A stretch of 64,000 nucleotides of DNA from Sphyrna mokarran. Its lineage: Eukaryota. A program made the position numbers and the translations under genes. Every line of letters begins with the position of its first letter. The first letter of the stretch is position 1. Below are positions 13,763 to 63,530 of the stretch, piece by piece. Below the pieces are notes generated by a model that did no database searches, was not told the origin of the DNA, and saw nothing but the letters and a program-made list of their open reading frames with translations. Location: positions 107,198,001-107,262,000 of the forward strand of contig JAGIQG010000009.1 of the NCBI GenBank assembly GCA_024679065.1. Direction: 5' to 3'.

Positions 13763-13775
13763 ATGAACCCGCAAG
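13763..13775 (+). CDS. AIF1: AIF1 coding exon 1 (MNPQ, phase 1)
   Basis: ATCATG start, donor AAG|GTAGGA, about 70 bp downstream of a TATA box; joins exon 2 in frame to give QGGKA. Confidence 0.75.
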
Positions 13776-16700
13776 GTAGGAGAGGAACGGTTCGATGTTC
13801 TCCCTCTGTCTGTCCTTTGCTGGTGAGACTTACAGAATACTGAAAGGGGCGGAGTGGACGTGGGGGAGATGTTACAATCGGTCGGTAGACTAGGACCTCA
13901 GCACACAGCCTCAGTGTAAAGGGACAATCCTTTGGAATCCAGATAAGGAGGAATTTCTTCAGAGGGTGGTGAATCTGTGGAATTCGCTGCCACAGAAAGC
14001 TGATTAGTTCATTTTATTAGTGTCACAAGTAGGCTTACATTGACACTGCAATTAAGTTATTGTGAATATCCCTTAGTTGCCACACTCCAGGTCACTGAGT
14101 GTATTTTAAGACAGAGAGAGAGAGAGAGATATGTTCTTGATTGGGAGTGGTGCAGTGGCACAGTGGTTAGCGCCCAAGGGTTCGATTCCGGGCTTGGGTC
14201 ACTGTCTGCGTTACGTTTGTGCATTCTCCCCATATCTGTGAGGGTTCACTCCCATTTATTCCTACATTCCAAAGATATGTGGATTGACTGTGCCATATCG
14301 TCCCTTAATGTCAGGGGGACTAGCAGGCTAAATGTGCGGGGTTAAGGGGGTGGGATTGTGGTCGGTGCAGATTCAATGGGCTGAATGGCCTCCTTTTGAA
14401 CTGTAGGAATCGTACGGTAAGGAAGATCCATTCAAAAGTTTGACGGAAGCTGGGAAAAAGCTGCTCTTGAGTCGGTTGAAGCGTGACCTCAGATAATTGT
14501 ATCTTTTTCCCAACGGAAGAAAGTGCAAAAGAGAATGTCCGAGGTGCTTGATTATACTGGCTGAGGGAAATGTAGACAGAATCAATGAATGGTAGGTTGG
14601 TTTGAGTAAAGGGCTGGGCTTCATTCATGACCCTTTGTAGTTTATTGCAATCTTGGGCAGAGCAGGAGCCATACCAAGCTGCGATACAACCAGAAAGAAC
14701 ACTTCTTATGCTACATCTTAAAAGTTGGTCAGAGTCACAGTGGACGTGCCACATTTCCTACTTCTAGTTTCTCACAAAGGAAGTTTTAAAAAAAGAAGTG
14801 CTGATGGATGGGAATTCGTCGTGATACAATCTCGAGTCCCCGTTTGACACCAGTGTCTGTGAGCTGCTTGCAAGCCTTCTGCCACATTGTGTTTGTTTTT
14901 GAAGGACAGAATGCCTGTTGGAGCATTGCTGTTCTAAGTGGCAAACATTATTGCCAAATGTGCAGGAGGAAACAAGTTTGAAGCGAATTTCACAATGTGT
15001 GTTTCATTGTCTAAAACGCTTCGCAGGTTTGCAATTCTCTGTCCTGGAGCTATTATCCTTCAGAATCCAAAGTCCAGAACATCTGCGGATAAGGCAAACA
15101 TTACGGGAAAATCCGTATGTCCGGTACGACTCCCACCAACTTTTTCACCATTAGAAGCATTCTTCCTGGTTGTAACACAGTTTGGTATGGCTCCTGCTGT
15201 ATCACAAGGAACTACGAAAGGTTGTGAATGTAGCCCAATCCATCACACAAACCAGCCTCTCCCATCCATTGACTCTGTCTTCACTTCCTGCTGCCTTGGG
15301 AAAGCAGCCAGCGTAAGCAAGGACCCCACACACCCCGGACATTCTCTCTTCCATCTTCTTCTGTCGGGTAAAAGATACAAAAGTCTGAGGTCACCGACAA
15401 ACTGATTCAAGAGCAGCTTCTTCCCTGCTGCCATCAGATTTTTGAATGGACCTACCTCACACTAGGTTGATCTTTCCCTACACCCTAGCTATGACTGTAA
15501 CACTACACACTGCACTCTCTTGTTTCCTTCTCTATGAATGGTATGCTTAGTGTCCAAGAAATAATAGTTTTCACCATATACTAATATATGTGACAATAAT
15601 AAATCAAATCCAATTAAAAGGATTGATTCCAGGGATGAAAGGATTGACATATGAGGAGAGATTAAACAGTTTGGGTTTAAGCTTGCTTTGTTTGGAAGGA
15701 TAAGACGGGATCTGATAGAGGAATATAAAATTTTAAAAAGGATCGATATAGTCAACTTAGACCATGTGTTTCTCTTCTGGGGCAATCTTGAACAAGAGGT
15801 CACAGGTAAAAGTTGCAAGGCGGTAGATTTGCAACAGATGAGGAGGAGCTACCTCTCACAGAGGGTGGTGAATTTGTAGAATTTGCTGCTCCATAGCGCG
15901 GTGGAGTCTGAATCGCTGAATGGTTTCAAGAAGGAGATGGATATATTTCTAATACAAAATGGGTTAAAGGGATGTGGCGAACAGGAAGGAAGGTGGATTT
16001 GTGACCATAGTAAATTTCCCCTTAGTGTCCAATGATGCGCAAGTTAGGGGGATTAAGTATGTCAAATGTGTTTTAGAAGTGTTAGAAACTCTACAGTGCA
16101 TAGAATCATAGGACCCTACAGTGCAGAAGGAGGACATTTGGCTCATCAAGTCTGCAACGACCATAATCCCATCCAGGCCCTACGTTCATATCCCTACATA
16201 TTTTACCCACTAACCCCCTAACCTACTCATCTCAGGACTCTAAGGGAAATTTATACTATGACCAATCAACCTAACCTGCACATTTTTGAACTGTGGGAGG
16301 AAACCGGACACCCAAAGAAAACCCATGCAGACACGAGGAGAATGTGCAGACTCCACACAGTCGGTGATCCCCAAGCCGGGAATCGAACCTAGTTCCCTGG
16401 AGTTGTGAAGCAGCTGTGCTAACCACTGTGCCACTGTGCTGAAGAAGACCATTCAGCCCATCGACACTGCACCAATGACAATCCCACCTAGGCCCGAATT
16501 CTGTAACAACACATATTTACTGCGCTAATCCCTCTGATCTACCCATCCCAGGACACTAAGGGGCAATTTAGCATGGCCAATGCACTTAACCAGTGCATCT
16601 TTCAGACTGTGGGAGAAAACAGGAGTACCTGGAGGAAACCCATGCAGGCATGGGGAGAATGTGCAGTCTCTGCACAGATGGTGACCCAAGCCGGGAATTG

Positions 16701-19700
16701 AACCCGGGTCCCTGGTGTTGTGAGACAGCAGTGCTAACCACTGTGCTGCCTGGGACAAAGAAAAGGGCCATTCGGCCCGTACAGTTCATGCCTGCTTTTA
16801 AGCTTCACTCAAAGAACAAAGAGCAAAACAGCACAGGAACAGAAGCATCAGCCCACCAAGTCTGCACCAATACATGGTTTCTTTATCTTCCACCTCATTA
16901 TTGCTGTTCCCTTTCTCCTCCCCTTTTCCCCCAATTCCTCCCTGCCAATTGCTTTGAATCTTTTACATTTCCTATGGACTGGGCATGCTAAACTGATCCC
17001 AGTGTCGGGGGACTAGCAGGATAAATATGTGAGGTTGGGGGGATAGAGCCTGTGGTCGGTGCAGACTCGATGGGCCAAATGGCCTCCTTTTGCACTGTAG
17101 GGATTCGACGATTCCATGAGACCCCCTCTCACTGTTCCAAACTCTAGTGAATATCATCCTAACCAACTTAAACTCTCCTCATATGGCAAACCTGCCTTAC
17201 CCAGGAATCAGCCTGGATGCTTCATCCCAATGTAGGGACAAATATATTGGTTAAAAAACATGAAAGGGGAAGAGTAGAGGTCCAGGGTATAGGAAATGAG
17301 CAGGAGGTTGAGTAGACAGCACCGCCAAATGGCCTTCCTATCTATGAATGCTGGAGGATACTGTGAGTTGTGCGTTGTGAAACCATCATTAAACAGCCCG
17401 GCTCCTGGTCTTAAGATTGAGGGCAGGTCATTGAAGCAGCAATCGACAAAGAAAGGGACGTGTGAATGTAATTCTCCCTGTCTTCTTGCAACTTCCTTTT
17501 TCTTGGTCAATAACTGAAACCATTGGAGTGTTTTCACCGCTCCCCCAATGACCTCTTGTGGGGAAGAACACAACCAGATGCCTTCAATCGAAGATGGTCA
17601 CCAAAGCAATCTGATAGGGAATTCGGAGGAAAGTTCCTAACCGAAGTGTGGTGAGGATGTGGAACTCATGGCCGCAAGGGGTGGTTGCCATGAATACATT
17701 GTGTGGTATAAGGGGAAGCTAGGCAAGCGAGTGAAGGAGAGAGGTTAAGATGGTAGATGTAGTTGAGTAAAGGTGGGAGGAGGCTCAAATTAAGCTGCAA
17801 ATTATACAGTAAATGGCAGAACCCTTGGGAGGATGCAGAGGGATCTGGGTGTACAAGTCCATAGACCACTTAAAGTGGCAACACAGGTGGATAAGGTGGT
17901 CAAGAAGACATACAGCATAGAATGACAGAATCCCTGCAGTACAGAAGTAGACCATTCAGCCCATTGAGCTTGTACTGAACACAATCCCACACAGGACCTA
18001 TTCCTGTAAGCCTGAACATTTACCTTGCTAATTCCCCTGACAATAGGGTCAATTTGGCATTGATAATCAACCTAGCCTGCACATCTTCAAACTGTGGGAA
18101 GAAACTGGAGCATCTGGAGGAAATTCATGCAAACACAGGGAGAAGGTGCAAACTCCACATAGACACTGACCTGAGGCTGGAATTGAACCTGGGTCCCTGG
18201 TACTATAAGGTAGCAGTGTTAACCACTGTGCCGCCATGACGCTTTCATTGGTTGCATAAAGGTTAGCAAGTTATCTTACAGCTGTATAAAACTTCAGTGA
18301 GGTCGCATTTGGAATATTATGTGTGGTTCTGATCACATTTGGAATATTACGTGCAGTTGGTCATTGTCACACTACCAGGAAGACGTGGATACTTTGGAGA
18401 AGATGCAAAGAAGGTTTACCAGGATGTTTCCTGGTCTGGAGGGTTTTAGGGATGAAGAGAGGTTGCATAAACTTGGACTGTTTGCACTGGAAATAGTGAG
18501 ACTGAGGAACATAGATAGGCTGGATAATCAGATTCTTTATCCCAAGGTGAAGGATTGACACAAGAGTGCACAGTTCAAGATGAGATGGGAAATTTAGTGG
18601 AGACGTGCGGAGAAAGTTTTTATTCAGAGAGTGGTGGGTGCCTGGAATGCATTGCCAGTGGAGATGGGGGAAGAAAGCACATTAGCAACATTCAAAGTGT
18701 GTCTTAACAGACACATGGATGGGAGGTGAAGAAAGGGATAGAAACTGCGTATTGGTGCAACCTTGCTGTTTTGCTCCTTGTTCTTTGTTTTTTAAGTGAA
18801 GCCTAAAAGCAGGCTTGGACTCTATGGGCCGAATGGCTTGTTTCTTTGTCATAGATCCCAGGTAAGAGGTCACAGGCTTATCAATACCCAATGCCCCAGT
18901 AACAACCCTAAGTCATATTGCTACCCAAATGCCTCAATATCTTGACGATCTGCATCTTTGTTTCAAGACCCACATTTGACCACTTCTTAACTGAATGAAA
19001 GTTGGCCACAATTTACTTGGACAATCTAATCGCCAGTATCTACACTGCAGGCTAGAGATAAAATAAATAATTCCCTGCACAGTTCCAACAAATACTCCCA
19101 GGACAGGGTTAGATACAGAGTAAAGATTCCTATTTACTGTCACAGCAAACACCCCCAGGATAGGTATAGCATGGAGTTAGATACAGAGTAAAGCTCCCTC
19201 TACACTGTCCTCATCAAACACTCCCAGGACAGGTAAGCATGGGATTAGATACAGAGTAAAGCTCCCTCTACACTGTCCCCATCAAACATTCCCAGGACAG
19301 GTACAGCACGGGGTTAGATACAGAGTAAAGCTCCCTCTACACTGTCCTCATCAAACACTCCCAGGACAGGTACAGCACGGGGTTAGATACAGGGTAAAGC
19401 TCCCTCTACACTGTCCCCATCAAACACTCCCAGGACAGGTACAGCACGGGGTTAAATACTGAGTAAAGCTCCCTCTGCGCTGTCCCCATCAAACATTCCC
19501 AGACAGTACAGCATGGGGTTAGATACAGAGTAAAGATTCTATTCCACTGTCTTGTTGAGATTACTTCTTTCACTATTAGGTTCTATTGTTGAATATTTCA
19601 GGTGGTAAAGCCTACGGAATCCTTAAAGCAAAACAGGATGACCTCCTGGAAGCAATCAATAAGGTATGGAGAAAAATAGAGATAAAACATTAATTTTCTT

Positions 19701-46516: not shown

Positions 46517-46875
46517 GAGGCGATGACCTAGGCGATGGCCTAGTGGTATTATGGCTAGACTTTTCCAAAACTCAGCTAATGTTCTGGGGACCCAGGTTCA
46601 AATCTCACCACGGCAGATAGTGAAATTTGAATTCAATTTGAAAAAAATCTGGAATTAAGAATCTACTGATGACAATGAAACCATTGTTGGTTTTTAGGAA
46701 AAAAACCCCATCTGAATTACTAATGCCCCTTTGGGAAGGAAATCTGCCATCCTTACCTAATCTGACCTACATGTGACTCCAGAGCCACATCAACTTAGTT
46801 GATTCTGAACTGCCCTCAGATAAATAGAGATAGGCAATAAATGCTGGCCCATGTCCCACATAAATGAATGAAAAA
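46517..46875 (+). mobile_element. Second tRNA-derived SINE family (representative); also about 10395-10715(-), 21035-21375(-), 25290-25620(-), 27668-28020(-), 47470-47800, 50800-51160(-), 61580-61740(-), 63635-63953(-)
   Basis: Head GGCGATGGCCTAGTGGTA...GGTTCAAATC, body GGAAGGAAATCTGCCATCCTTACC, tail GGCAATAAATGCTGGCC...ATGAATGAAAA. Confidence 0.8.
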
Positions 46876-48378: not shown

Positions 48379-49444
48379 TGCTTCAAGCGTTAACAAGTTT
48401 CTCTTGATGGTATATTTATATTCTTGTCTATGTTTTTTTTTTAAGAGAATAGCATTTGATATTTTGGCCCCTACGTGAGACGTCTGGAAAGATGTGGAAA
48501 AATGAACAATAATTCTGAGATCGTTTGATAAGATCACAAAGAAATTCACGAAGCTACGGCTTGACATTAAGAACAACGTGTGAATTGGTTAATAATCACA
48601 TCAGTTTAAAACTTACAAAGGCTGCTATGAAAAAGTCTTCACAGATAAGCACCAAGGCCATTCACCCAAACAGATTCATTAAATTAGATATCCGGAACAG
48701 GAAAAGGCCCTTGTAGCCAAACGGACCATCTAAAATGTAAAGCCCTCTGGGACAATTGGGCAAGATACTAAACCGGCAGGCTGCAGTTTAAAGACAAATA
48801 GATTGCAACCCTGACGAGTGAATAAACAGGATATGGGTCATTTCCAGGATGAAAGAGACTTTCTGATCACACTAAGTTGAGTACCAGACATAAGGGCGCT
48901 GTGAACCCTTACTTAGGAGAGAGGTATGTGACCTATGTGCCTCCAGCATGGCCGCTGGGGACACACCCAGAGATCAGTGTGGTAGCACCTGATTGGACTC
49001 TTATCGATCAAGGGGATCAAGTCCTGATCGATTGATTGGCAATGGTCAAAAGGAGGCGTGAAACCAAATAGGGTATAAAGGGTGCTGCACAAGCAGGAAT
49101 CTCTCTCTCTCTGACTCCACGAACGAGCTATAACAATGGTGAACATCACCAGCAAGAGCAGGAAGGAGAACCGAAGCAGAATGCCAGGCAAGACGGAAGG
49201 ACCAGACTATGCAGACGACTACCGAGACCAGCACAGAGATAAAGGCATTTGCCTGTCACGCAAAGCTAAGTCAAGGTCTTGTACTATACTTGAATTCTAG
49301 TATTTTCCTGTAAGATAACTTATTGTTCATCGGATGGGTGATTATTGATTGTGTGGATCTAAATAAATATTTGTACTAACGTGACGTCTACTCGTAGTTA
49401 TTTGTCCACCATATAATGGTTAAAACAGACTGTGGCAGGCAACA
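48379..49444 (+). mobile_element. Probable solo LTR (5' boundary uncertain)
   Basis: ATTGG boxes at 48992 and 49035, TATAAA 49074-49079, AATAAA 49362-49367, ends GGCAACA; GTGT flanks both proposed ends. Confidence 0.55.
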
Positions 49445-52400
49445 GTGTTGATATACATAGATTCAGGCACTGTTTGGGAGTGTGATAACTTGTAACTTCA
49501 CTAAATCTTCACGCTAATTGGATATTATAATTAAGCAAGTGTGAGGCAATTGTAATTGCTTTAATATCTGGATGTAACCTGAATCAGTAACTGAGTGGAT
49601 TGAGAACTCCTATGCCACAATTGGTACAGGCTAATTACTTCTAATAGAATGAGAAGCTATAATTGCTTGTGCATTTGAGTTCTGTATCCTGGCTAGTTAC
49701 ACCCTGTGATCAGTGACTTTGTAGGGTCTGAGATATCTTGGTTTAAACAGCTGTTTAAGAGAACTCCCTGACTTGGTCTGGTTACTTGAAGGGTAAATAT
49801 GTGTTCAATTTAAAGGCTGACATCAAAGCTGGCAACACTGTAAATGTGCAGATTACTTCATAAAGAAAATGTACAGGAAAATCAATTCAAATTGGACCCT
49901 TTCAAGGTACTTGCAATAATTGCATTGAAGAGCAGGTCTCAAGCATGTACATTACTTGACAAACAACATACCATTGAATGGTTAATGGCACCAAAAGTGA
50001 ATCAAAAATGATCAAAACACTTGTCATAGGGAAATCTATTTTAAAACAATTGGGATTGTCTTAAACACACTAACTGTTAAAATGAGCAATCTTAAAGTGA
50101 ATGGATAAGTAATTTGGAGGAGAACAATTAAAGGCCTGGTGAGGAGTAACCCCCAAGATTGCTACAGATGAATGGAGAACTGGATTTTGTATTATGAAAG
50201 TTTTTATAATACTGTTATAAATTATATATAATTTAAGTTTATAAATATTTTGAAATTGAGTGAGGCTCTAAGTGTCAGAGGAAGGAACATTGATCTAATT
50301 TGCATCATCTGTAGATCACATGCAAGTTATCATCGAATGTAGAAAATTCAATTCATTGTATTCTTTGGGTGCAGGTCCTCACAAGGGTTACAGAAAACTA
50401 ACAAAGTGATCAATAATAAGGCATGGGGAGGGGGAATCCTACCTTACAGCAACAGGAGCCTTTTTATACATGACTGATATTTGAATGACATGTAATCTAC
50501 ATAGGAATCAATGAATGAGTTTAATAATATAGTAAATGGTCAAATTTCATATTTAAAAATATGATGCATAAATGGTTTGAGTTGCAAGGAAACTGGCAAT
50601 GTATTTACACTTGTAGGAGAACACAAATGCAATAAATATGACAAAGGGATAGGGCTACCATATGTGACATTAAATGCCCAAGCAATCTCTGCCTCGAGGT
50701 AGGAAGCTGATGTTCAATAGTTAGTTTTATTTTAATTAAAGCACAACCTCTGTCAATATGATAGTTTTATACTGAATTCTGGGGGACATCACATGACTGG
50801 CTTTTTTAATTCATTTGTGGGACATAGGCATTGCTGACTGGCCAGCATCTATTGCCCATCCCTAGTTGCACTTATTCTGAGGACAGTTGGGAGTCAACCG
50901 CATTGCTGTGATCCTGGAGTCACATGTTGGCCAGACCAGGTAAGGACAGCAGATGTTCTTCCCTAAAAGATGTTAGTGAGCCAGATGAGTTTTTCTGACC
51001 ATGGTTTCATGGTCATTGATAGGTTTTTCATTCCAGATTTCTTTTATTGAATTTGGGTTCCATCATCTGCCATGGTGGGATTCGAACCTGGGTCCCCAGA
51101 ATATTAGCTGAGTTTCTGGATTAATTGTCTAGCAATAATATCACTAGGCCATCATCTCCTGGCACCATACTCAAGGTTGAAAAGGGTGAAAGAACATTGC
51201 CTTAAGGTAGTGAATGAAGGCCTCAATATTGAACAATGACTCGTATAAAACATCCACCTCCCTCACAATTGAAATGATCAGCTCTGCTGTCTAAGCTCAA
51301 AGTCTATTGTGCAAAGAAAGCAAAGCAGTAAGACATTTAACCTTGCATATCAAATTAGTGCAATTCAACTTTAGTAGGAATCACTTTATTTCACACTATT
51401 CTGGAAATTTAGAATTAACTTTTGGTTCTTTACATTTTAATGTTAGTTACATGTGCTGTTATATTTAGCAAACTAATTACTTTCAAACAATTTCACTAAG
51501 GTAACCCATTCCAAGGAGTGTTGTAGCAGTAATCCTAAAATGGTTGACCAAAAGAGTCACTGATTAGGGTCAGATTTAATAAGTGAACTGAAGTTTTGAA
51601 ACAGTACGGAAGATGTCAAGCATGTGAACATGACAGTATCTTTCTGGAATGCTTGCTCTACCTGATAATTCTAAAACGATCATAAAACTCCAGGACACCA
51701 CACTAAGCCTGATTAAAAATAAACAAGGCATTCATTGTTCCTTCAGTTAAAGGGCACTGGCTACTGGTAAAATGGTACCAATTCAATCTTGCAAAGAAAC
51801 ATTTTGTAAAACTGGCAAAGAAACATCTTTAAGATACATTTCTTAAAGGCATAGCATTATCACACAAACATGGGACGACTGCCAAATAGCACTTGACCTT
51901 GTGCTACTTGGGCAGAGATCTGAATAGATGACCCACCATTTAGGTTTGTTGGAGTACCCTACTGGGAGAGTGAGGAGTGGAAAAGAGCCATTTTAGTGAG
52001 AATTAGAGTTTGGGGCTCAGTTAATCCTAGATCCTATCCCCATATCCCTACATATTAACCCACTAATCCCTCTAACCTATGCATCTTCGGACACTAAAGG
52101 GCAATTTTAAGCATAGCCAATCAACCTAACCTGCACATCTTTGGACTGTGGGAGGAAAATGCAGTACCCAAAGGAAACCCACGCAGGCACAAGGAGAATG
52201 TGCAAACTCCACACAGACAGTGATCCAAGCTGGGAATCGAACCTAGGTCTGTGAAATAGCAATGCTAAGCACTGCTACGGTGCTGCCCACGGACCTGGGT
52301 TCGAATCTCGGCTTGAGTCATAGTCTGTATGTAGTTTGCACATTCTCATTGTTTCTGCGTGGGTTTCCCCCCACAGTCCAAGGATTTGCGAGTTGGGTTG

Positions 52401-55400
52401 ATTGGTCATGTTAACATTGCCCCTTAGTGTCCTGAGATATGTAGGTTAGAGGGATTAGTGTGTAAAGATAGGGGGATAGGGTACGGAGGGGTGTGTGGAT
52501 TGTGATTGGTGCAGACACGATAGGCCCAATGGCTTCCTTCTATACTGTAAAGTATCTATGATCTCTCTAATGTGCTTTGAACATATAGATGAGGTCATGG
52601 TCGCTATGGTAGATCAATTGAAAACAAACCTGAGCGAGAGCATATTTTTGGGGGGGCTGTGGGCAGACTGTGGACAGAGATGTGGTAGAACGGAATTGGA
52701 AGGTGTTGGGATGGTGAATATACCACTTGGAGGGGTGGGGCACTGGAGGGAGCTGAAAACAATGGTGAGGGTCTTAAAATTGAGACATCACCAACCAAGG
52801 AGTCCCCTACATCCATAAAAATCTGGTGAACTGGTGCGATGACAATCATCTCTGTGTCAACAAAACAAAAGAGAGAGTCATTATCTTAGGAAGCATACTG
52901 GAGAATATGTCCCTGTTTACTTCAACGGGGATGAAGTGGAAATGGTCAAGAGCTTCAAGTTTCTAGGTGTCCAGATCACCAACAACCTGTCCTGATCTCC
53001 ACATACCAATGTTATCGTTAAGAAAGCATCTACTTTTCTGGAAACTAAAGCGATTTGGAATGTTCACTACGACTCTCACTATGTTTTACAGATGCACCAT
53101 AGAAAGCATTCTTTCTCCTTGTATCACAGCTTGGTATGGCTCCTGCTCTGTGCAAGATTGCAAGAAGCTATAAAGGGTCATGAACGAAGCCCCAGTCCAT
53201 CACACACTTGCCTCTCAGCTATTGACTCTGTCTCTCCCTGCCTCTAAAAAGCAGCCAGCATAACCAAGGAGTCCGCATAACCAAGGAGTCCACACACCCC
53301 GGCCCTGCTCTCTTCCACCTTTTTCCATTGGGAAAAAGATACACAAGTGTGAGGTCACGTACCAGCGACAGCTTCTTCTCTGCTGCCATCAGACTTTTGA
53401 ATGGACCTATCTCATATTGGTTGGATTTCTCTACAGCTATGACTGTAACATTCCATTCTGCACCCTCTCCTCTCTTTTTCTACATATGGCATGTACCCTG
53501 TCCTCTCCTTTTCTCTGTATAGCGTGCAAGAAACAATACTTTGCACTGTATGCTAACACATGTGACAATAATAAATCAAAAAGTTTCAGCACGGAAAGAG
53601 GCCATTCGGCCCACTTTATCCATTCAGCCGGGTGTCATTTCCAATCGCACCTTTCCTATCCATGGCGGGGGGAGGATGGTGGCAGGGGTGAGGAGGGGGT
53701 GGTGGGGGAGGCGTGGGGAGGTCAGTCTCAGCAACCAAAATGCAACATCAACTCCTAACCAGTGATAATTGTCTTCTAAAAATTACAGACGGCATTAGCT
53801 CAGAAGTTAAGTGCAAAGTCAAACTCGCCTTCCTCTTCAGCCTCTCTCCTGAGAAACGAAGGCGGCTACACGTTACAACATACCGCTGCGATGAAGAAAT
53901 GGATTAAAAAACCCCAACAAGTCCATTACAGGAGAAATAGAAACTGGTTCATAAAAAATAAAGAACCCCCTTTACAAAGCGGCAATGAAATGAGGGCGAG
54001 GATTAAAGTCATGGTATTTTAGAAAATAACAGAAGCAGGATGTGGTCTTGCAGGTTATACTGAGGAGTTGCTGAGGAGATAATATCAACATGGAGTAACT
54101 TCATTTTCTAAGGCAGCGCATCACCATCATGCTAACGATTGGATTACACTCAACCCGTAAACAAGTCTTTCAACCAGGAACATGCAGATTCTCAATCTGG
54201 TAAGTCCTTGTTAATACGTTCTGTTATGCAGGTAATGACTCCAAAGATTTGCGGGTTGGACAGATTGGCCATGTTAAATTGCCCCTTGGTGTCAGGGGGA
54301 TTAACAGGCTAAATACATGGGTGTTACAGATAGGCTTACACTGCAATGAAGTTGCTGTGAAATCCCCAAGCTACTGTGAAAAATCCCCTAGTTTCCGCGT
54401 TCCAGCGCCTGTTTTGATACGCTTACGGGGAATTCAGCATGGCCAATACACCTAACAAGCACATTTCTGTAGGAGATACGGAGAGAACGCAGACTCCCCA
54501 CACACAGCTGACTCAAGCTGGGAATGGAACCCCAGCCCCTCGTTCTGTGAGGCAGCAGTGCTAACCACGGTGCCACTATGTAGCCGCTGGCGGCTCAATG
54601 CCGCAGTCAGCGCTGAATGCGCTATTTTGCCCTTCCAGAATGGGGAGCAGTGGGCTTGGGGTGTTGCAATACTCGGACCAGCTGAAAGAGAAAAGAGCTA
54701 TTTTCTTCTGAACTGCAATCTGCAACAAAAAAAAACACAGCAACAACGGAGGTGGCGGGAAATATCACCTTCGCCTGCCTTGTTCGCATTGTAAGGTCAT
54801 AGGAGTTGTAAATGTTTCGCAAATAAAATTTCGCAACAGAAAGTGCCACTAATGTATTGTTCAATTGCAAGCTAGATGGACATCCCCTCATGTAGAAAGC
54901 AGCTTCGCCTCTGTAACACAGACCTCACAACAGAAAAGTAATCTGAATGAGAATCCTTCAATTAGTCTCTCCCCCCCCCGCTCCCCAGCCTGTACTCTCT
55001 CCAAATTACCATGTATTAAATCGTTGTTATCGGGATTGAGGTTTCTTTATAAGGTAGGACTGGGAGCTTGAAGTATCAAAGGTGGGTCTACAGAGATTAT
55101 TCTTCTGTCTTCTCTCCATGAGACTGTGCCAATCAGTTTGAGGGCATTTTCATTCCAGGTTCTCGTTCTTCAGAGAATGCAGAAGGAATCTCCCTGGCCA
55201 CAACTCCAGTGCTGTTCCACAAAGAAGTGGAAACAATTCTTGCATCGTTTGCCTGTAGTTTATTAACTGAGGTGGGGGGAGGTATATTTCGCGACAGGCA
55301 CGCTAATCAAGGTAAATTTGATTTTCTCTCTCTCTCTCCATAGTGCAGTCTCTCCTTCCATAGAACCATAAAAAATTACAGCTCAGAAACAGGTCTGTTG

Positions 55401-56023
55401 GCCCTTCTTGTCTGTGCTGAACCATTTTTTTTTGCCTAGTCTCATTAACCTCCACTTGGCCCATATCCGTCCACACCCCTCTCATCCATGAACCCGTCCA
55501 AGTTTTTCTTAAATGTTAAAGGTGACCCCGCATTTACCACTTTATCCGGTAGTTCATTCCACACTCCCACCACTCTCTGTGTGAAGAAGTCCCCCTCTAA
55601 TATTCACTTGAAACTTTTCTCCTTTTATTCTTAACCCACGCCCTCTGGTTTTTTTCTCCCCTGGCCTCAGTGGAAAAAGCCTGTTTGCATTAACTCTATC
55701 GATACCCATCAAAATCTTATACATCTCTAACAAAACTCCCCTCATTCTTCTACGCTCCAAGGAATAAAGTCCTAACCTATTCAATCTTTCTCTGTAACTC
55801 AGCTTCTTAAGTCCCAGCAACATCCTCGTGAACCCTCTCTGCACTCTTTCAACCTTATTTACATCCTTCTGACCAAAACTGACCACAATACTCTAAATTC
55901 GGCCTCATCAATGCCTTATATAACCTGACCTTAATACTCCAACTTTTATACTCGAACATTCCAACTTTTATACTCGAATGATCCCAACGAGCCAATGATC
56001 ATTCCAAAAATCTCTTCCCTTCC

Positions 56024-56935
56024 CCGCTCCTTCCATCTCTTCCCCACCCTCTGCCCTCCCCTAATTCCTTTCCTCTTCTGCCCCTCCACATTCCCTTTCT
56101 CTCCGTTCTCCACCTTTCCTCTCTCTCCCTCTCGCCACCCCCTCTCTAACTTTCCTCCTTATCGTCGGCCCCTCCATCCCCTTCCCGTCCCTTCTTCATC
56201 TCCCCTCCCTCTCTCCTATCCCTTTCCCTCCCTCTCTTCTCCCCTCCCTCTCACCGTGTCCTCTCCCTCCCAACCCTCCCTCCTGTCTCCCCTCCAACCC
56301 TCTCCCCTCTATTCCCGCCCTCTCCTCTTCCCTCCCTTTCTCCACCTCCTCCTCGCTCTCTCTTCTCCCTCTGCCTTCCCGCCCTCCCTCCCTCTCTCTT
56401 CCAACTCTTCCCTTCTTCCCCTTTATTCCCCTCTTTCTCTCCTCGCTTCTCTCCTCTCCCCTCCATGCCATACCAGTCCCCTCCCTTCATTTCTCTCCTT
56501 CCCCCTCCCTCCTCTCTCTTCCTCCGTCCTTCCTCCCTCCTCTTCCCCTCCCTCGCCACATCTATCCCTCCATCCGTGCCACCCCTCCACATCCTCTCTC
56601 CCCCTTCCACCCTTCTCATCCTTATCCCCTCTCCGTCACCCCTTCCTTTCCCCCTACTGTCTCTCCCCTTTTAATCCTCTCTCTTCATCCTCCACTCCCT
56701 CCCTCCCCTTCTCCTCTATTCCCGCCCTCCCACCTTTGGCCCCACACTCTCCCTCTCCTTCCAACTTCTCTCCCGTCTCCCCCTCAATACCCTCCATCCC
56801 ATTCCTCTCGTCTCATTCCTCTCTCCCCTCATTAAACTCCTCCTCACCTCGTCCCTCCTCTTCTCCTACACCACCCATCCCCTCTCTCTTCTCTCTCTGC
56901 CCCACTCTCCCCCCCCCCCCCCCGCTCTCTCCTTC
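56024..56935. repeat. About 0.9 kb polypyrimidine (CT-rich) low-complexity tract
   Basis: Almost entirely C/T on the + strand. Confidence 0.95.
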
Positions 56936-57527
56936 CGAAATGTGTGACTCATACCTTTTTGGAAGACACTTCTGCATTAACCTACCCCACACCTCCTCCC
57001 ACATCGGTTAAAGAGATATGCAAACCACAGTAAAACATCACTTAAAACAATAAGTGTTTCTTTCATACCGTTGACTCTGTTTCCCTCTTTCCACAGAAGC
57101 TTCCAGACCTGCTGAGTTTATCCAACATTTTCTGACTTTGAATCAAGCTACAAAAGCTTGCTGAGCGAACTTGCTGCTCTGACTGCTTAACATCTCAGTC
57201 TTCAAACTGAAATGGGGACTAGATTAGTTTGCAAAAGACAAACAGGTTTGAGAATCAATGCATCCTTAAAGGTCGGTGTGTATGTGTTTTGCTCTTTGCG
57301 AGATGCTGGCAGTGATCATAGGCTGACTGTAAAACAGGATATGCACCCCCACGAAACCAGACAGCGGGTGATACAGCTCTGCTGTAACCGCGACGGGACG
57401 GCATGTGAAATGCTAACAATGAGAAAGAACGTGCACTTTATTTGAGCCTGAGCGATGTGTACTCCCCCCAAACCCCAGCACCCCTTACCCTACACCACAT
57501 ACGCACCCTCAGCCCCTTCCAAAATCC

Positions 57528-57782
57528 ATCGGAATTCTCAGATGTTGCAAAGGCAGGAATCGCCGCTTCGTTCAATTTCAGCAAGATTTTCCGTCCTCGT
57601 CGGCGGCTGGAATTCGCCGGTCCCGCTGCCGCCGAGGGAGATTTGGCTGAGCGCCAAATTCTTCATTCCGTGGTGGAGGGGTGGGGCGGGGGGCATGCAA
57701 GAACGGAGAATCCCCAGAGTCTATTCACTTCTAGCGGAGACCGGAGAATCTCAGCCACCAGCGAGGACGGAAAATCCAGGCC
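57528..57782. mobile_element. GC-rich hairpin/MITE-like dispersed element; similar pieces about 34690-34830, 39012-39135, 60520-60670
   Basis: GGAATTCTC/GGATTTT ... GAGAATC/GGAAAATCC inverted ends recurring at several loci. Confidence 0.45.
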
Positions 57783-59475
57783 ATTTATGTCTCAATTCTG
57801 GGGCATGCTGACAAACCTGGCATTCCTATTGAGAATGATTAGTTCGTATATTTCTTGGATTATAGGTTAGAAATTCTAGGAGGGTGACATGGGTCATTTT
57901 CCCCGTCAGACGGAGCAATCGGGTTAAAGTCTGAGGGGAGCTCCCCTGACAGTGCGGCACGCCCTCAGTACTGCATTCAAATGTCTGTGTGGGGCTTAAA
58001 CCCAGCGGCTCCAGTTCCAAGCATGTTACAATTCACATGTGACCTATAGAAGATGGCAGATCTATATTCTACCAGTCTGAGAGCGTCCCATTTGGAAAGG
58101 AGCAGATGTGACACCCACTATTCAGGAAAGGAGGGGGTAGAGAGAAAAAATAGGGACATGTTATAGTCAACATGACATCCTTCACTGAAATCCGAGATCA
58201 GGACAAGGATCTTACCTCAGAGGATGCCAGGTAAGAGCAGAAGTAGGCCAATCGGCCCCTCAACCGCCTCTGCCAGTCAATCAGATGATTTGTTTGTGTT
58301 TTTAATTCATTATCCCCCATCTACTCTTTGAATCCCAAGATAAAGGCAAAATATTGCGAATGTTGAAACCTGAATTAAAACCCTAATGAATCATAGAACC
58401 TCACAGTGCAGAAGGAGGCTATTCAGCCCGTTGAGTCTGCATCGGTAACCATCCAACCCAGGCGCTTTCTGCGTCACCCGACACACTTACCCCGTCAATC
58501 TCTCTAAGTACACATTCCAGGACACTAAAGGACAATTTAGCAATCGATAACATGCACATCTTTGGACTCATCCTGATTCAAAACTTTATTCTCTCCCCAC
58601 AGATGCTGTCAGACCTGTTGAATTTTTCCAGCATTTTCTGTTTGTGCATTCTTTGATTCCTTTGACCAATCTATCTACGCCCCCTCCACCTTAGAAATAT
58701 TCAGTGACCCTGCCTCCAACACATTCTGAGGCAGAATGTTCCAAAGACACATGCTCCTCAGAGAAACAAATGCATTAGCATTCTTTCGTAATTGGCAGTG
58801 TAGACTTACATTGACACTGCAATTAAGTTATTGTGAAAATCCCTGATTTGCCACACTCCAGTTTGGGTACACTGAGAGAGAATTTCGTACGGCCAATGCA
58901 CCAAACCAGCATGCCTTTTAGGCTGTGACAGGAAACCAGAGCACCCATGGGAAGAAACCCATGGGGAGAATGTGCAGACTAGCACCGACAGTGACCCGAG
59001 CCTGGAACCGAAACCAGGTCCTCGGAGCTGTGAAGCACTGTTAACAACGGTGTCACCGTGCCATCCTCTGCGTGTTTTGATTTTGTGAAGATATTCGATA
59101 AAGATCCATGTTACTGTACCAGGTATGGGTACATGGAATCAAGAGTAATTTTTTTTATGAAGGCTGTGTAAAAAAAGAGGTCACAAGGGACATTTCCAAG
59201 GACCGGTGTAACAATTGCAGCCTCCTACAATCTGCACGAAGGGGCTGTGGATGAGCAGAGTTTAGCAGAGAGACACGCAGCTCAGCGGGAAAGCAGGTTG
59301 TGAGCAGGAGGTGAACAGTTTTGCGACAGGCGGCTCAGCAAGTGGACAAGCAAGCGGCAGAGACAGGATGTGTTGAAACATAGGACTGGAGTACAGGGCA
59401 TGGCGGAAGCAGCAGATTACATTGCTTGCTTCTGTTTCTGAGACTAAGGGTTGCAGAGGATTATAATGGGCAAAA

Positions 59476-59768
59476 CGGCGGCACAGTGATTAACACTGCT
59501 ACACCACAACACCAGTGGGTTCGATTCCTGGCCCGGGTCACTGTCTGTGCGGAGTCTGCATTTTCCCCCTCGTGTCTGCGTGGATTTTCTCGGGGTACTC
59601 CTGTTTCCTTCACAGTCTGAAAAATGTGCTGGTTAGATACATTGTCCGTGCTGAATTGCCCCTCAGTGTAACCGAACAAGCGCCGGAGTGTGGTGACTAG
59701 GCAATTTTCACAGCAACTTCATCGCAGCGTCAATCTAAGCCAACTTGTGACACTAACAAATAAAACTT
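59476..59768 (+). mobile_element. V-SINE variant with alternative tail (TTTTCACAGTAACTTCATTGCAG...TGTGACACTAATAAATAAACTTT); also about 695-935, 3775-4055, 9452-9716, 28190-28862, 58795-59062(-)
   Basis: Same head and V-domain as the CR1-tailed copies but a different 3' third. Confidence 0.8.
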
Positions 59769-60029
59769 TGCACGGTACGGTATGATATAGATATATACAT
59801 TACAGCAACTTCAACCTGGAGATACTCAGAATTGAACTGAACTGAATTTCAACTTAGTTACAAACTGCACCAGCTTGAAAGAAGACAGATCTGAAGTGAA
59901 GTTTCTGTAAGTGAGGGGGAGTATTGGGGTAGGTGCTGTGTATGTTGCTGGGGGGGAGGGGGGCGGGGGAGGTGGAAGGGAGTTGTTTTGAAGCTTTGCC
60001 CTGTTGGCGAAATGATGTGCCACCCCCAC

Positions 60030-60209
60030 TTCACTCACATCCTGTCATCAATCTTGTCCTGATTTGCAGGCAGCGGCGTCTTCCTGTCAGCTTTAGCTGT
60101 CAGTGCGCCCTAGTCCCAGCGTCCTACACTCGGGCTGGTGAATGTAGCCGGATCTCGGCGGTCCTGCGATCGCTCCAGTGAGAGCGCTTTTCCCTCCGCT
60201 GAACGGAAA
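60030..60209 (+). promoter_or_regulatory. Probable TATA-less promoter/5'UTR of the NCR3-like gene
   Basis: Unique, locally CpG-rich sequence with ETS sites CACATCCTGT (60036-60045) and CTTCCTGT (60080-60087) just upstream of the ATG. Confidence 0.4.
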
Positions 60210-60270
60210 ATGCCAATGAATCTGTGTCCTCTGCCTGCCTTTATTCTGACCTCCTGTCTCTTCGCCGCAG
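60210..60270 (+). CDS. Leader exon of the NCR3-like gene
   Basis: AAAATG start, 20-codon hydrophobic signal peptide, donor CAG|gtaaga. Confidence 0.85.
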
Positions 60271-60393: not shown

Positions 60394-60424
<31 letters not shown>

Positions 60425-63400
60425 GTGTGTGTGTGTGTGTGTGTTTGGGGAAAGGTGGGGAAGGGGTGCTACTTTATCTTCTTTAGTGGTGTTCTAAACT
60501 ACCCACCCCATCCCCATACTGCCGGATTCTCCAACCTCGCCCGCAGCAGGAATTCTCCAGTTCCGCTGCAGTGAACGGTTGATGCACTAAATTTTCCTTC
60601 TTGCGGACGGGGCTTGAATCCCTCCGGCTGTGTTGGAGGGCTCGCAATGAGCCCGGGAAATTTTATTTTGGCTGAGGGGGGTGTGTCGGAGCTGATTGAT
60701 TAGCTGCCCTTGTGTGATGGTGGGAGACTCGCACTACTGCATGGGGTTAATATTGAGAGGGGCGACGGCTGATGTGACACTGTCCACCCCCTTTTTCGCT
60801 TCTCCTCTGCCTGCCCAATAATATTTGGAAGGTATACAAGGCATGTCCAGTTCTGTTCAGGAACCTTCTCCACCCCCACTTCCCCTATAGCCCAGTAACG
60901 TTTTGAAAACTAGCGGTCCACACAATAGGGAACGAACACGCGTGCAAATAGTAGAAAGTAAGACCTTCACTTTAGTTCAATTCCTTTCGGAGGAGAAGTT
61001 CAAGTAAAAGGAATCGAAAGGGGGAAAATAACTCAAATTGTGATCAAGTTAACTCATGTATCAAGGCGGCAAGGAAGAACAACGAGTGATGACTAACTGA
61101 AGACTTTATTCCCGACAGGAGTTCACTCAGATAAGCCAAAAATACAGCAGACACCTCGGTCAGTGAATCTGACTGAAGGCCGTTCCGTTACTATGAATTG
61201 CACCATCAATATCGCGGGGGGTAAAGCTTACAAATGGCTGAAAAATGATATTGAAGTACAGCGGGTTATTTCGACGTACGCGAAAAGAGTAACCGAAAAC
61301 CAGCGAACTTTCAATGATCCTAACATATTATGGACAAGCCTAGAGATTAGAAATGTCGCAGAATGCGATTCGGCAACGTACTATTGCCAAGTGGACAACG
61401 TAGGCCAAATAACAAAGGGTGAAGGCACCACCCTAACCGTAACCCGTAAGCACATTGTGTTAATTGTGTGTGTGTGTGTGTGTGTAGCTTTATGTACTTA
61501 CGAAAACTTCCCTCTATAAATGTGCGCATGTGAGCGTCTGTGCGAGGGTGAGTGTGGGTATATCTGTAGTTTTTTTTACTATTCATTCGTGGGACTTGGG
61601 CGTCGCTGGTTCGCAAGCATTTATTGCCCATCCCTAGTTGCCCTTGGAGGGCAGTTAAGAATCAATCACATTGTTGTGGCTCTGGAATGTTGGCCAGACC
61701 AAGTAAGGATGGCAGATTTCCTTCCCTGGAGGATATTGGTATGTATGTGGGTCTGTCTCAGTGAGAAGGCACACGTGCTTATGAAGCTAAAGCCTTGTGT
61801 GATTTCAGGAAGAAGTTTGACATAGCTCTTTGGGGCTAAAGGGATCAAGGGATATTGGGGGAATCAGGATATTGAATTTGATGATCAGCCGTGAACAAAA
61901 GGAGTGGCGGGGCAGGCTCAAAGGGCCGAATGGCCTACTCCTGTTTCTAGTTTCTATGTTTCTATGTATTTGGTCTTAATTTGTGAGCGTTCAAATGTGA
62001 TTGCCTTGTGGTTATACATGTCTGTGTAAGAATATACGTGTGTGACACACACACATACATTCTCAAACAGACAATCCCACATAAATATATGTGTCTGAAC
62101 CTGTGAGAGTTTATCTGTAACTCTGTATCACAGTGTGAGTATGTGTGCGTGACTGTATCTCTGTAAGAGTGTGTATCTGTGTGCGTTTGCATTGGAGTGT
62201 CTATATAGAAACAGAAAATGGAAGCAGCAGTAAGCCATTCGGCCCGTCGAGCCTCCTCCACCATTCATTTTGATTATGGCTGATCATCAAATTCAATGTC
62301 ACGATTGCTCCCTTCCCCATATCCCGTTAGCCCCTAGAACTATATCTAATTTCTTCTTGAAATCAGGCAATGTTTTAGCCTCTGCTTTTTTCTGTGGTAG
62401 TAAACTACACACATTCACTACTCTCTGGGTGAAGAAATATGTCCTCACCTCAGTCCCAAGACGTTTACCCTCTTATCCTCAAATTATGACCCTTACTATT
62501 TTTATTGTTCATTCATGGGACACAGACGTCACTGGCCGTCCGGCATTTCTTTATTCCCCATCCCGACTTGTCCTTGAAACTATTTGCTCGGCCATTTCAG
62601 AGGGCAGTTGGGGGTCAACAACATTGCTGTGGCTCTGGAGTCACATGTAGGCCAGACCAAGAAAGGACGGCAGATATCCTTTCCTAAATGACATTAATGA
62701 ACCAGATGTGTTTTTCCAACAATTGAGAATGGTTTCAAGTCATTCTGGGCTCCCCCACCACCAGGAACATTCTGAATTTACACTGTCTTATCCTGTTAGA
62801 ATTTTATATGTTTCTATGAGATCCCCTCTCAATCTTTTGAACTCCAATGAGTATAATCCTAACCAAATTAGTCTCTTCTCATATGACAGACCTGCCTTCC
62901 CAGGAATCAACCTTTGCTGCACTTCTTTGAGGACCTCTTTTCCAGATAAGGAGATCAAAACTGCACATAATACTTCAGGTCTGGCCTCACAAGCAACCTA
63001 TACAAAGCTTATGAGAGCAAGTGCGTATGTCTGCATGAGAATGTGTGTGTATGTGTGCCTGTATGGGACTGTTTGTACGTATGTCTGTGTCAATCGGATA
63101 TGTATATATATCTCTGGGACTATGCGTATGCCTCTTGGTGATAATATGTTTGCCTCACTACCTCAGAGTGTGACAGCCAAAATATGTCAGTAGATACGTG
63201 TCTATGAGTGTGCACGCCTGCCTGTCACTGTTTGTGTGTGTCTGTGAATGTTGCAGGCAATGTGCATGCATGCACCAAGGGGGACTGTTGCTGAGACCGC
63301 CATCACTTAATGTGAAACAACCCTATTTAATATTAACGGAAAAAAATCACTATTCTTTTGTTGAGGTGCCAATGCTTGTCTAACTTATCTTCCCACTATC

Positions 63401-63530
63401 ATTTTAGGTGTTACATCAAAAACAAAATGCTCGATTAATGATGTGCTTCTTGGAGTATTGGCTACAGTGATAGGATTGCTTTGTATTTTACTAACTATAG
63501 TGTCACTGCTTCTCCACCAGAGAAAAAAAG
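60210..63530 (+). CDS. NKp30/NCR3-like single VJ-type IgSF type I membrane receptor, 3' incomplete: join(60210..60270,61119..61445,63408..63530)
   Basis: Three phase-1 exons with GT-AG boundaries. Leader MPMNLCPLPAFILTSCLFAA/GVHS; V domain with Cys (MNC), Trp (YKW), DSATYYC and G-strand GEGTTLTV; stalk plus TM VLLGVLATVIGLLCILLTIVSLLL followed by HQRKK. YYCQVDNVGQITKGEGTTLTV resembles NKp30 YVCRVEVLGLGVGTGNGTRLVV. Confidence 0.85.
61119..61445 (+). CDS. V-J Ig domain exon of the NCR3-like gene
   Basis: Acceptor cccgacag, donor C|gtaagc, 327 nt open; canonical V-set residues; N-glycosylation sequons NLT and NCT. Confidence 0.92.
63408..63530 (+). CDS. Stalk/transmembrane exon of the NCR3-like gene
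   Basis: Acceptor attttag, donor AAG|gtattt; encodes RVTSKTKCSINDVLLGVLATVIGLLCILLTIVSLLLHQRKK. Confidence 0.85.

What the first reader, a model, noticed from the sequence alone, without database searches (positions are those of the whole stretch)
13763..63530. AIF1 next to an NKp30-like gene: a shark MHC class III-type segment
Seen: a full AIF1 gene followed 28 kb later by a single-V-domain receptor gene, with no other gene recognisable between them. Established: in humans AIF1 and NCR3 are neighbours in MHC class III (LTB-LST1-NCR3-AIF1-PRRC2A) but head-to-head. Here the V gene is downstream and co-oriented. Inference: the AIF1-NKp30 family linkage predates the shark/bony vertebrate split, with a local inversion or a paralog expansion in one lineage.
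Basis: partly seen in the sequence, partly recalled or inferred. Interest (0 to 1): 0.85.

Follow-up and report, generated by a model that had tools for sequence, protein, structure and literature searches.

The report
Shark AIF1 beside NCR3-family receptor gene
A complete AIF1 gene lies 28 kb upstream of a one-V-domain receptor gene that matches a nurse-shark gene deposited as NKp30 (NCR3); sharks and rays keep the two genes on one chromosome, but the tie between this family and the shark MHC is already published, so the finding is sound and not new.

Summary
AIF1 is complete on the + strand: six GT-AG exons from 13763 to 32037, 143 codons. The N gap lies in intron 2 and hides no coding exon. 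The start codon of a receptor gene follows 28,172 bases later: leader 60210-60270, VJ-type V exon 61119-61445, transmembrane exon 63408-63530, tail beyond the window. One spliced contig of a public run matches all three exons without a mismatch. No other gene was recognised between the two genes.

The EF-hand gene is AIF1, not AIF1L. It groups with reptile and amphibian AIF1, and the AU test rejects a union with AIF1L (p 0.022).

The V gene belongs to a one-row-per-species elasmobranch orthogroup. That group includes the nurse-shark protein QTT61902.1, deposited as natural cytotoxicity triggering receptor 3. V gene and AIF1 share a contig length in 10 species and look adjacent in two.

Kinship with tetrapod NKp30 could not be tested here. 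The basic transmembrane residue of NKp30 is absent.

The scan's own unchecked notes list further NKp30-like clusters elsewhere in this genome. Interest is low to moderate.

The parts
13688..13699 (+). TATA-like element upstream of AIF1 exon 1
   Evidence: TATATAAAAATA, ending 64 bases before the ATG. Calling it a promoter element is inference; no transcript start was mapped.
13763..13775 (+). AIF1 coding exon 1 (MNPQ plus 1 base)
   Evidence: ATG at 13763, GT donor at 13776. It matches residues 1-4 of P0296.
19602..19663 (+). AIF1 exon 2
   Evidence: AG/GT borders. Pfam AIF-1 E 0.0014. 17 of 20 identical to P0296 residues 6-25.
23403..23564 (.). Assembly gap (162 N) inside AIF1 intron 2
   Evidence: It lies between exons 2 and 3. 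All 143 ortholog residues are accounted for by exons outside the gap. An (AC)n run follows at 23565-23872. The gap was not filled or looked up.
28878..28944 (+). AIF1 exon 3
   Evidence: AG/GT borders. Pfam AIF-1 E 0.0013. 21 of 22 identical to P0296.
30224..30265 (+). AIF1 exon 4 (first half of EF-hand 1)
   Evidence: AG/GT borders. 13 of 13 identical to P0296.
31082..31244 (+). AIF1 exon 5 (EF-hand pair core)
   Evidence: AG/GT borders. Pfam AIF-1 87.7 bits. In the PDB, AIF1 scores 70.9 bits and AIF1L 70.0 bits. 52 of 53 identical to P0296.
31953..32037 (+). AIF1 exon 6 with stop codon
   Evidence: AG acceptor, TAA at 32035-32037. The only PDB matches are the AIF1 chains 2g2b and 1wy9. 26 of 27 identical to P0296.
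32038..60088 (.). Intergenic stretch, repeat-rich, no gene recognised
   Evidence: Pfam scans of open frames, tblastn, Rfam.
60089..60270 (+). V-gene exon 1: 5' UTR from at least 60089, ATG at 60210, leader peptide
   Evidence: Contig record 9 of run X2 starts at 60089. GT donor at 60271. 17 of 20 identical to the leader of P0001.
61119..61445 (+). V-gene exon 2: end of the leader (GVHS) plus a VJ-type V-set domain ending KGEGTTLTVT
   Evidence: Pfam V-set E 5.3e-12. Spliced contig. 78 of 108 identical to M. asterias P0001 and 52 of 106 to nurse-shark NCR3 P0277.
63408..63530 (+). V-gene exon 3: short stalk with one Cys, uncharged transmembrane helix, start of the basic tail
   Evidence: AG/GT borders. 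Spliced contig. 28 of 40 identical to P0001 residues 131-170. No Arg, Lys, Asp or Glu lies inside the helix.

Best explanation
The window comes from a carcharhiniform shark close to, but distinct from, Mustelus asterias. It holds the shark AIF1 gene and, 28 kb downstream on the same strand, the first three exons of a type I membrane receptor.

The receptor has a single germline-joined VJ-type V domain. It is a member of a one-row-per-species elasmobranch orthogroup, and the nurse-shark member of that group was deposited as NCR3 (NKp30 family). AIF1 and this gene form a neighbour pair kept across sharks and rays, on the chromosome that papers describe as carrying the elasmobranch MHC. This is therefore the shark version of the human class III NCR3-AIF1 neighbourhood.

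Shown:
- both gene models;
- splicing of the V gene;
- AIF1 rather than AIF1L;
- orthology to QTT61902.1;
- shared contig length of the two genes in 10 species.

Inferred: the receptor does not work like mammalian NKp30, which couples to adaptors through a basic transmembrane residue. It more likely signals or traffics through its own tail, which is strongly conserved in relatives: ...KACIALQRQFVAYITEKS..., a polybasic run and, in sharks, a C-terminal DYVHxG. It may form a disulfide-linked dimer through the stalk cysteine or the invariant extra cysteine of the V domain. Its fast-changing V domain points to a variable ligand.
For: - Gene models and splice phases.
- Spliced transcript contig with 0 mismatches over the three V-gene exons.
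- AIF-1 Pfam matches.
- AIF1 tree and AU tests.
- The last exon matches only AIF1 in the PDB.
- AIF1 pieces are 133 of 139 identical to M. asterias AIF1 and tile it completely.
- The profile search gave 19 hits at E 0.001 or less among 6853 candidates. Eighteen are elasmobranch proteins of 121-258 aa, among them P0277, 'natural cytotoxicity triggering receptor 3 [Ginglymostoma cirratum]' (QTT61902.1).
- The V-gene tree follows the species tree, with the window sister to M. asterias at 99/96.
- Neighbourhood: S. torazame locus tags scyTo_0001113 (V gene) and scyTo_0001114 (AIF1) lie on one 1,053,902-base contig. The M. asterias accessions XP_078075386 (V gene) and XP_078075387/8 (AIF1) are consecutive.
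- No charged residue in the transmembrane stretch, and a conserved tail, in the 15 relatives aligned.
- Papers. [quoted passage not shown] PMC10751288 (section 4 part 1 and passages read) states that most human MHC genes lie on one chromosome in elasmobranchs. A table in PMC1309616 lists the human order LST1, NCR3, AIF1, BAT2.
Against: - No NKp30 chain is among the 60 best PDB matches of the V exon or of the orthogroup profile. Those matches are TCR alpha, antibody light chains and scFv, VNAR and SIRP alpha, with a few non-V-type Ig proteins (titin, Dpr-interacting proteins).
- The other nurse-shark NCR3 subtypes did not appear at E 0.001 or less. This orthogroup is therefore far from them in sequence.
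- NCBI's automatic names for orthologs differ: SIRP-alpha-like in M. asterias, CD8-beta-like for a white-shark isoform.
- The hallmark basic transmembrane residue of mammalian NKp30 is absent.
- The window holds no further class III marker.
- Linkage to class I, class II, C4 and DDAH2 in this genome rests only on unchecked scan notes.
Confidence: 0.85

Rival explanations
1. The V gene is a separate VJ-type IgSF receptor lineage (SIRP-, CD8-beta- or CD28-like, or elasmobranch-specific) with no special common origin with tetrapod NCR3. Its position beside AIF1 would then be unrelated to the human NCR3-AIF1 pair.
For: - NKp30 is absent from the top 60 PDB matches.
- There is no basic transmembrane residue.
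- The stalk carries a cysteine, as in CD28 and CD8 (recalled).
- Automatic names point to SIRP alpha and CD8 beta.
- The only hit outside elasmobranchs is a gar two-V-domain receptor at E 7.5e-6.
Against: - The nurse-shark ortholog was deposited as NCR3, and a later paper uses the shark NCR3 set as MHC-linked VJ genes.
- The position next to AIF1 matches the human neighbourhood.
- PDB rankings are swamped by thousands of antibody and TCR chains, so they cannot rank a distant NKp30.
Confidence: 0.25
2. The EF-hand gene is AIF1L, or a pre-duplication AIF1/AIF1L gene, and the segment belongs to an MHC paralogon rather than to the MHC.
For: - Exon 5 scores the same against human AIF1 and AIF1L (70.9 and 70.0 bits).
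- The EF-hand loop DLNNQGEI resembles the AIF1L proteins fetched.
- NCBI names the shark proteins 'AIF1-like'.
- Mammalian AIF1 is unresolved in the trees.
Against: - The union with AIF1L is rejected (p-AU 0.022).
- The gene is sister to reptile and amphibian AIF1 at 92-95 / 88-89.
- The C-terminal exon matches AIF1 only.
- A second catshark paralog (P0009) takes the AIF1L side, though weakly (52/55).
Confidence: 0.04
3. The AIF1 model is an assembly chimera: exons 1-2 and exons 3-6 come from different loci joined across the N gap.
For: Continuity across 23403-23564 is unknown, and the gap abuts a long (AC)n run.
Against: - The two halves complement each other exactly, with no residue missing or doubled against P0296.
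- Both halves show the same level of identity to M. asterias.
- tblastn found no second copy of any exon in the window.
Confidence: 0.03

Closest known systems
Nurse shark NCR3 family gene, protein QTT61902.1 (deposit name seen; I take it to belong to Kinlein et al. 2021, Immunogenetics 73:333, of which I saw only the title in reference lists)
   Same: Ortholog. The profile search gave 54% identity to M. asterias P0001 over 99% of its length, and 52 of 106 V-domain positions are identical to the window. It shares the leader/V/TM layout, the extra ECDS cysteine, the uncharged transmembrane helix and the conserved tail. The gene tree follows the species tree.
   Different: It comes from a different species. 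The V domain has diverged fast: 72% identity even to Mustelus, against 96% for AIF1.
Human NCR3 (NKp30)-AIF1 pair in MHC class III
   Same: A one-V-domain VJ-type receptor gene sits next to AIF1. The human order LST1-NCR3-AIF1-BAT2 was seen in a table of PMC1309616.
   Different: In humans the two genes are head-to-head with NCR3 upstream of AIF1 (recalled). Here the V gene is downstream and co-oriented. Human NKp30 has a transmembrane Arg and uses CD3 zeta or FcR gamma (recalled); this gene has neither the Arg nor a similar tail. Sequence kinship was not testable here.
AIF1L (IBA2), the paralog of AIF1
   Same: Same Pfam family (PF21008) and an equal score on exon 5.
   Different: The tree and AU test separate them, and the last exon matches AIF1 only. 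Catsharks carry a separate AIF1L-like gene (P0009).
Other joined-VJ IgSF receptors (SIRP alpha, CD8 beta, CD28/CTLA4 family, antigen-receptor V domains)
   Same: A V-set domain with the G-x-G-T-x-L-x-V G strand. The best PDB scores go to TCR alpha, light-chain, VNAR and SIRP alpha V domains. PMC11599192 (passages read) lists NKp30 with CD79, NITR, SIRP, CD8 and PRARP as joined-VJ genes.
   Different: No C domain follows, the tail is unrelated, and there is no rearrangement signal because V and J are fused in one exon.

Membership tests
AIF1 (as opposed to AIF1L) | AIF-1 EF-hand domain (Pfam PF21008) over the whole protein | tested here: met
   Four exon pieces match PF21008. The ortholog P0296 matches it at 228.8 bits over positions 1-140 of 140.
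AIF1 (as opposed to AIF1L) | Groups with tetrapod AIF1 and not with AIF1L in a tree | tested here: met
   Sister to reptile and amphibian AIF1 at 95/89 and 92/88. The AU test rejects the union with AIF1L (p 0.022) and not the union with all tetrapod AIF1 (p 0.419). Only exon 5 of the window itself was in the tree; M. asterias P0296 stood in for the full length. Mammalian AIF1 stayed unresolved.
AIF1 (as opposed to AIF1L) | AIF1-type C-terminus | tested here: met
   The exon 6 piece matches only two PDB sequences, both AIF1 (2g2b at 2e-5, 1wy9 at 7.9e-4), and no AIF1L chain at E up to 10.
NKp30 / NCR3 family | A single V-set domain of joined VJ type encoded by one exon, after a split leader | tested here: met
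   Exon 61119-61445 encodes GVHS plus the V domain and ends in KGEGTTLTVT. Pfam V-set E 5.3e-12. The spliced contig confirms the exon borders.
NKp30 / NCR3 family | Orthology to a gene that its describers named NCR3 | tested here: met
   P0277 (QTT61902.1), nurse-shark NCR3, lies in the same orthogroup.
NKp30 / NCR3 family | The V domain groups with tetrapod NKp30 rather than with other VJ-type families | not testable with these tools
No NKp30 chain appears in the top 60 PDB matches, which is uninformative given 4117 and 6510 matching chains.
NKp30 / NCR3 family | A basic residue in the transmembrane helix for adaptor pairing (a feature of mammalian NKp30, recalled) | tested here: not met
   No Arg or Lys lies within the helix in the window or in any of the 15 aligned relatives.
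NKp30 / NCR3 family | Binding of B7H6 | not testable with these tools
   This needs an experiment.
MHC class III-type segment | Two or more class III marker genes side by side | tested here: met
   AIF1 and an NCR3-family gene lie 28 kb apart with nothing recognised between them.
MHC class III-type segment | Further class III markers (PRRC2A, TNF/LTB, NFKBIL1, C4) nearby | tested here: not met
   None is in the 64-kb window. Unchecked scan notes place DDAH2 0.44 Mb downstream and C4 10.3 Mb upstream on the same piece.
MHC class III-type segment | [quoted passage not shown] | not tested
   Only unchecked notes (class II about 17 Mb and class I about 21 Mb before the window) and papers on other sharks.

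The most novel reading that the evidence does not exclude
This AIF1-adjacent, tail-conserved orthogroup, with one gene per species, is the positional ortholog of tetrapod NCR3. The other shark NKp30-like genes are later expansions.

If so, the ancestral NKp30 was a self-signalling, possibly disulfide-linked receptor with an uncharged transmembrane helix. The adaptor-coupled activating form with a basic transmembrane residue would be a later gain. The AIF1-NCR3 pair would have flipped its relative orientation once between cartilaginous fish and tetrapods.
Probability: 0.25. Interest if true: 0.5.

Novelty: already known. Interest (0 to 1): 0.25.

Why it matters
The NCR3-AIF1 neighbourhood is one of the few immune-receptor linkages that can be followed from sharks to humans. 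It feeds the argument that joined-VJ receptor genes sat in the proto-MHC before antigen receptors began to rearrange.

This window adds a clean, transcript-supported gene model in one more shark. It also shows that one NCR3-family gene shares a contig with AIF1 in 10 elasmobranch species and looks adjacent to it in two. That gene has a fast-changing V domain and a frozen cytoplasmic tail without the adaptor-binding residue.

The central claim, that NCR3-family genes are MHC-linked in sharks, is already published, so the gain is one of detail. I could not see whether the direct adjacency to AIF1 is drawn in Fig. 2 or in supplementary files S1-S3 of PMC10751288, or in Kinlein et al. 2021.

Tried and rejected
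- An EF-hand loop pattern scan found nothing, because the loop is split by an intron. Looser motif scans then found the exons.
- Searching the V frame alone gave only 2 hits among 6 candidates. The profile of three sequences reached the whole orthogroup.
- The ESM Atlas gave only generic V-set and 'antigen receptor' clusters, with no NKp30 lead.
- The PDB sequence and profile searches cannot rank NKp30 among thousands of antibody and TCR chains.
- Eight repeat-like open frames gave no Pfam match.
- Rfam gave nothing.
- I considered and rejected AIF1L, a hidden exon in the N gap and a second V exon in the window.
- Expression of AIF1 was not tested, because the single read-laying run went to the V gene.
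- The full-length spliced proteins of the window were never assembled or searched. Exon pieces were searched one at a time, and database proteins of relatives (P0296, P0001) stood in for the full length.

Searches behind 'not seen in print':
- AIF1 + shark + 'MHC class III': 2 papers, neither about sharks.
- AIF1 + NCR3 + cartilaginous: 1 paper, on zebrafish.
- 'aif1' occurs 0 times in the main text of PMC10751288.
- NS344823 / MT914154 / QTT61902: 1 paper.
Full report
**What is there.** The window has one assembly gap (23403-23564). Stop-to-stop frames on the + strand showed AIF1-like pieces at about 19.6, 28.9, 30.2, 31.1 and 31.95 kb. Reading the DNA gave a six-exon model: 13763-13775, 19602-19663, 28878-28944, 30224-30265, 31082-31244 and 31953-32037. 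Every intron is GT..AG, and the total is 432 bases, or 143 codons plus TAA. A TATA-like element lies 64-75 bases upstream of the ATG. Four of the five exon pieces given to Pfam matched AIF-1.

Each piece was compared on its own with M. asterias AIF1 (P0296, 143 aa). The pieces land on residues 1-4, 6-25, 26-47, 49-61, 63-115 and 117-143, with 133 of 139 identical. This leaves exactly the four residues encoded by split codons. The gap therefore sits in intron 2 and hides no coding exon. Physical continuity across it was not tested. An (AC)n run of about 154 copies starts right after it, which may be why the assembly broke there (my inference).

**The downstream gene.** The V-gene ATG at 60210 lies 28,172 bases after the AIF1 stop codon. 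It opens a 61-base leader exon. A 327-base exon (61119-61445) encodes the end of the leader and a V-set domain that ends in KGEGTTLTVT. A 123-base exon (63408-63530) encodes a short stalk with one cysteine, an uncharged transmembrane helix and the first basic residues of the tail. All three exons end in phase 1. The rest of the tail lies beyond the window.

A 1065-base contig of run X2 comes from the same coded organism as the best DNA holder. It lies on 60089-60267, 61116-61445 and 63408-63530 with no mismatch and no gap, and then runs on for 433 bases outside the window. The first junction is placed three bases to the left of mine because the letters CAG fit both sides. With the GT-AG rule the junction is 60270/61119. 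This is a spliced transcript, so the gene is expressed and the model is right.

**Nothing recognisable between the genes.** Of 328 open frames of 62 aa or more, 299 were scanned against Pfam.
- All frames upstream of AIF1 and all between or after the two genes were included, except the V-exon frame itself.
- Twenty-four frames in AIF1 intron 2 and five frames over known exons were left out.
- One frame matched ALKBH8_N (4914-5246). I read it from recall as a retrotransposon remnant. Two other matches were weak and look like chance.
- tblastn with two V-gene relatives found no other V-like exon.
- Rfam found nothing.
- Genes made only of short exons could be missed.

**AIF1 or AIF1L.** Exon 5 scores alike against human AIF1 (70.9 bits) and AIF1L (70.0 bits). 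Exon 6 matches only AIF1 chains. A library-wide phmmer search with exon 5, followed by a search with the best hit, gave 143-145-aa proteins in 14 cartilaginous fishes. NCBI names them 'AIF1-like'.

In maximum-likelihood trees the window's exon 5 falls in the chondrichthyan clade (99/90 and 98/91). That clade is sister to reptile and amphibian AIF1 (95/89 and 92/88), while AIF1L forms its own group. Holding the chondrichthyan clade together with AIF1L costs 13.5 log-likelihood units (p-AU 0.022). Holding it together with all tetrapod AIF1 is not rejected (p 0.419). A second catshark gene (P0009) sits with AIF1L, but weakly (52/55). Mammalian AIF1 is unresolved in these short alignments. I read the gene as AIF1.

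**What the V gene is.** The V exon's best PDB matches are TCR alpha V-J domains (6e-10). The orthogroup profile's best matches are antibody light chains and scFv, VNAR, TCR alpha and SIRP alpha. No NKp30 chain is in either top 60. With 4117 and 6510 matching chains, that says little.

The first protein search found two relatives. A profile of those two plus the window's exon found 19 proteins at E 0.001 or less among 6853 candidates. Eighteen of them are elasmobranch proteins. The only other hit is a gar two-V-domain receptor at 7.5e-6. One of the eighteen is QTT61902.1, 'natural cytotoxicity triggering receptor 3 [Ginglymostoma cirratum]'.

A tree of one protein per species, 15 proteins plus the window's exon, follows the species tree. 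Rays split from sharks, carpet sharks group together, and the white shark joins the ground sharks. The window is sister to M. asterias at 99/96. This is a one-row-per-species orthogroup, and the window's gene is its member in a ground shark near Mustelus.

The V domain changes fast: 78 of 108 positions are identical to M. asterias, and only 86 of 108 between two Scyliorhinus species. AIF1 is 96% identical between the window and M. asterias. In the relatives, the transmembrane helix has no charged residue, and the tail (KACIALQRQFVAYITEKS, a polybasic run, and DYVHxG in sharks) is nearly frozen.

**Linkage.**
- S. torazame: the V gene and AIF1 carry neighbouring locus tags (scyTo_0001113 and scyTo_0001114) on one 1,053,902-base contig.
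- M. asterias: the protein accessions of the two genes are consecutive.
- For six further species in the V-gene hit list, the AIF1 row was not among the 120 listed, so nothing can be said about them.

**Context in this genome, from unchecked scan notes only.** NKp30-like genes run from 25 kb to about 0.44 Mb beyond the window's end, where one lies tail-to-tail with DDAH2. Another cluster sits next to C4 about 10.3 Mb before the window. MHC class II lies about 17 Mb and class I about 21 Mb before it, on the same piece. I tested none of these notes.

**Papers.**
- PMC10751288 (section 4 part 1 and passages read): most human MHC genes lie on one chromosome in elasmobranchs, chromosome 19 in the white shark. 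It names NKp30 as a non-rearranging VJ gene of the MHC lineage. 'aif1' does not occur in its main text, and its Fig. 2 and supplements were not visible to me.
- Kinlein et al. 2021: I saw only the title in reference lists, and the paper is not held. From memory, its abstract reports MHC linkage of the shark NCR3 loci and eight divergent subtypes.
- PMC1309616 (passages read): a table gives the human order LST1, NCR3, AIF1, BAT2.
- That human NCR3 and AIF1 are head-to-head is recalled.

**Verdict.** Observation confirmed and interpretation supported, but the core inference is already in print. What may be new is small. One NCR3-family gene lies next to, and co-oriented with, AIF1 here. It looks adjacent to AIF1 in two other species and shares a contig with it in 10. 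It lacks the adaptor-binding residue and has a conserved tail of its own. Whether it is the true positional ortholog of tetrapod NCR3 remains open.

Noticed in passing
window 19099-19535, 19819-20538, 31527-31787: AIF1 exon 2 (19602-19663) sits between two arrays of the same 69-base minisatellite (6.4 and 10.5 copies). A third array, with a unit that looks like the reverse complement of the first two, lies in intron 5.
   Followed up: no
window 23565-23872: About 154 copies of an AC dinucleotide start directly after the assembly gap. This may explain why the assembly broke there.
   Followed up: no
window 61364-61366 (Cys in AECDS) and 63427-63429 (stalk Cys): The V domain has an extra cysteine, seven residues before the canonical F-strand cysteine. 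It is invariant in all 16 aligned sequences and has no invariant partner. The stalk cysteine is present in sharks and absent in the five rays aligned.
   Followed up: partly
relatives P0001, P0002, P0274-P0286 (tail beyond the window's end): The cytoplasmic tail (KACIALQRQFVAYITEKS, a polybasic KKKKRK run, and a C-terminal DYVHxG in sharks only) is almost unchanged across sharks and rays, while the V domain diverges fast. The tyrosine motifs fit neither the ITIM nor the ITSM consensus as I recall them.
   Followed up: partly
P0003 (S. torazame scyTo_0001114): The older catshark AIF1 model reads exon 2 in the wrong frame: its N-terminus resembles an alternative frame of the window's exon 2. The newer model P0153 is correct.
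   Followed up: partly
P0009 (S. torazame scyTo_0019675): Catsharks carry a second AIF1-family gene that sits, weakly, on the AIF1L side of the tree. Cartilaginous fish therefore seem to have both paralogs.
   Followed up: partly
window 61.5-63.0 kb and 63.6-63.9 kb: V-gene intron 2 and the stretch after the TM exon hold very high-copy repeats. Summed contig depth reaches about 1e6 in four runs from at least three coded organisms.
   Followed up: no
window 55935-57008: A C/T-rich low-complexity stretch (GC skew -0.47) gives a spurious 338-aa Pro/Ser/Leu-rich open frame. No Pfam match was traced to it.
   Followed up: no
window 4914-5246 (+): An open frame matches Pfam ALKBH8_N (E 2.4e-9). I read it from recall as a retrotransposon ORF remnant.
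   Followed up: partly
P0290 (Lepisosteus oculatus, 335 aa): This is the only hit outside elasmobranchs for the V-gene profile (E 7.5e-6). It is a two-V-domain membrane protein with tyrosine motifs in its tail.
   Followed up: no
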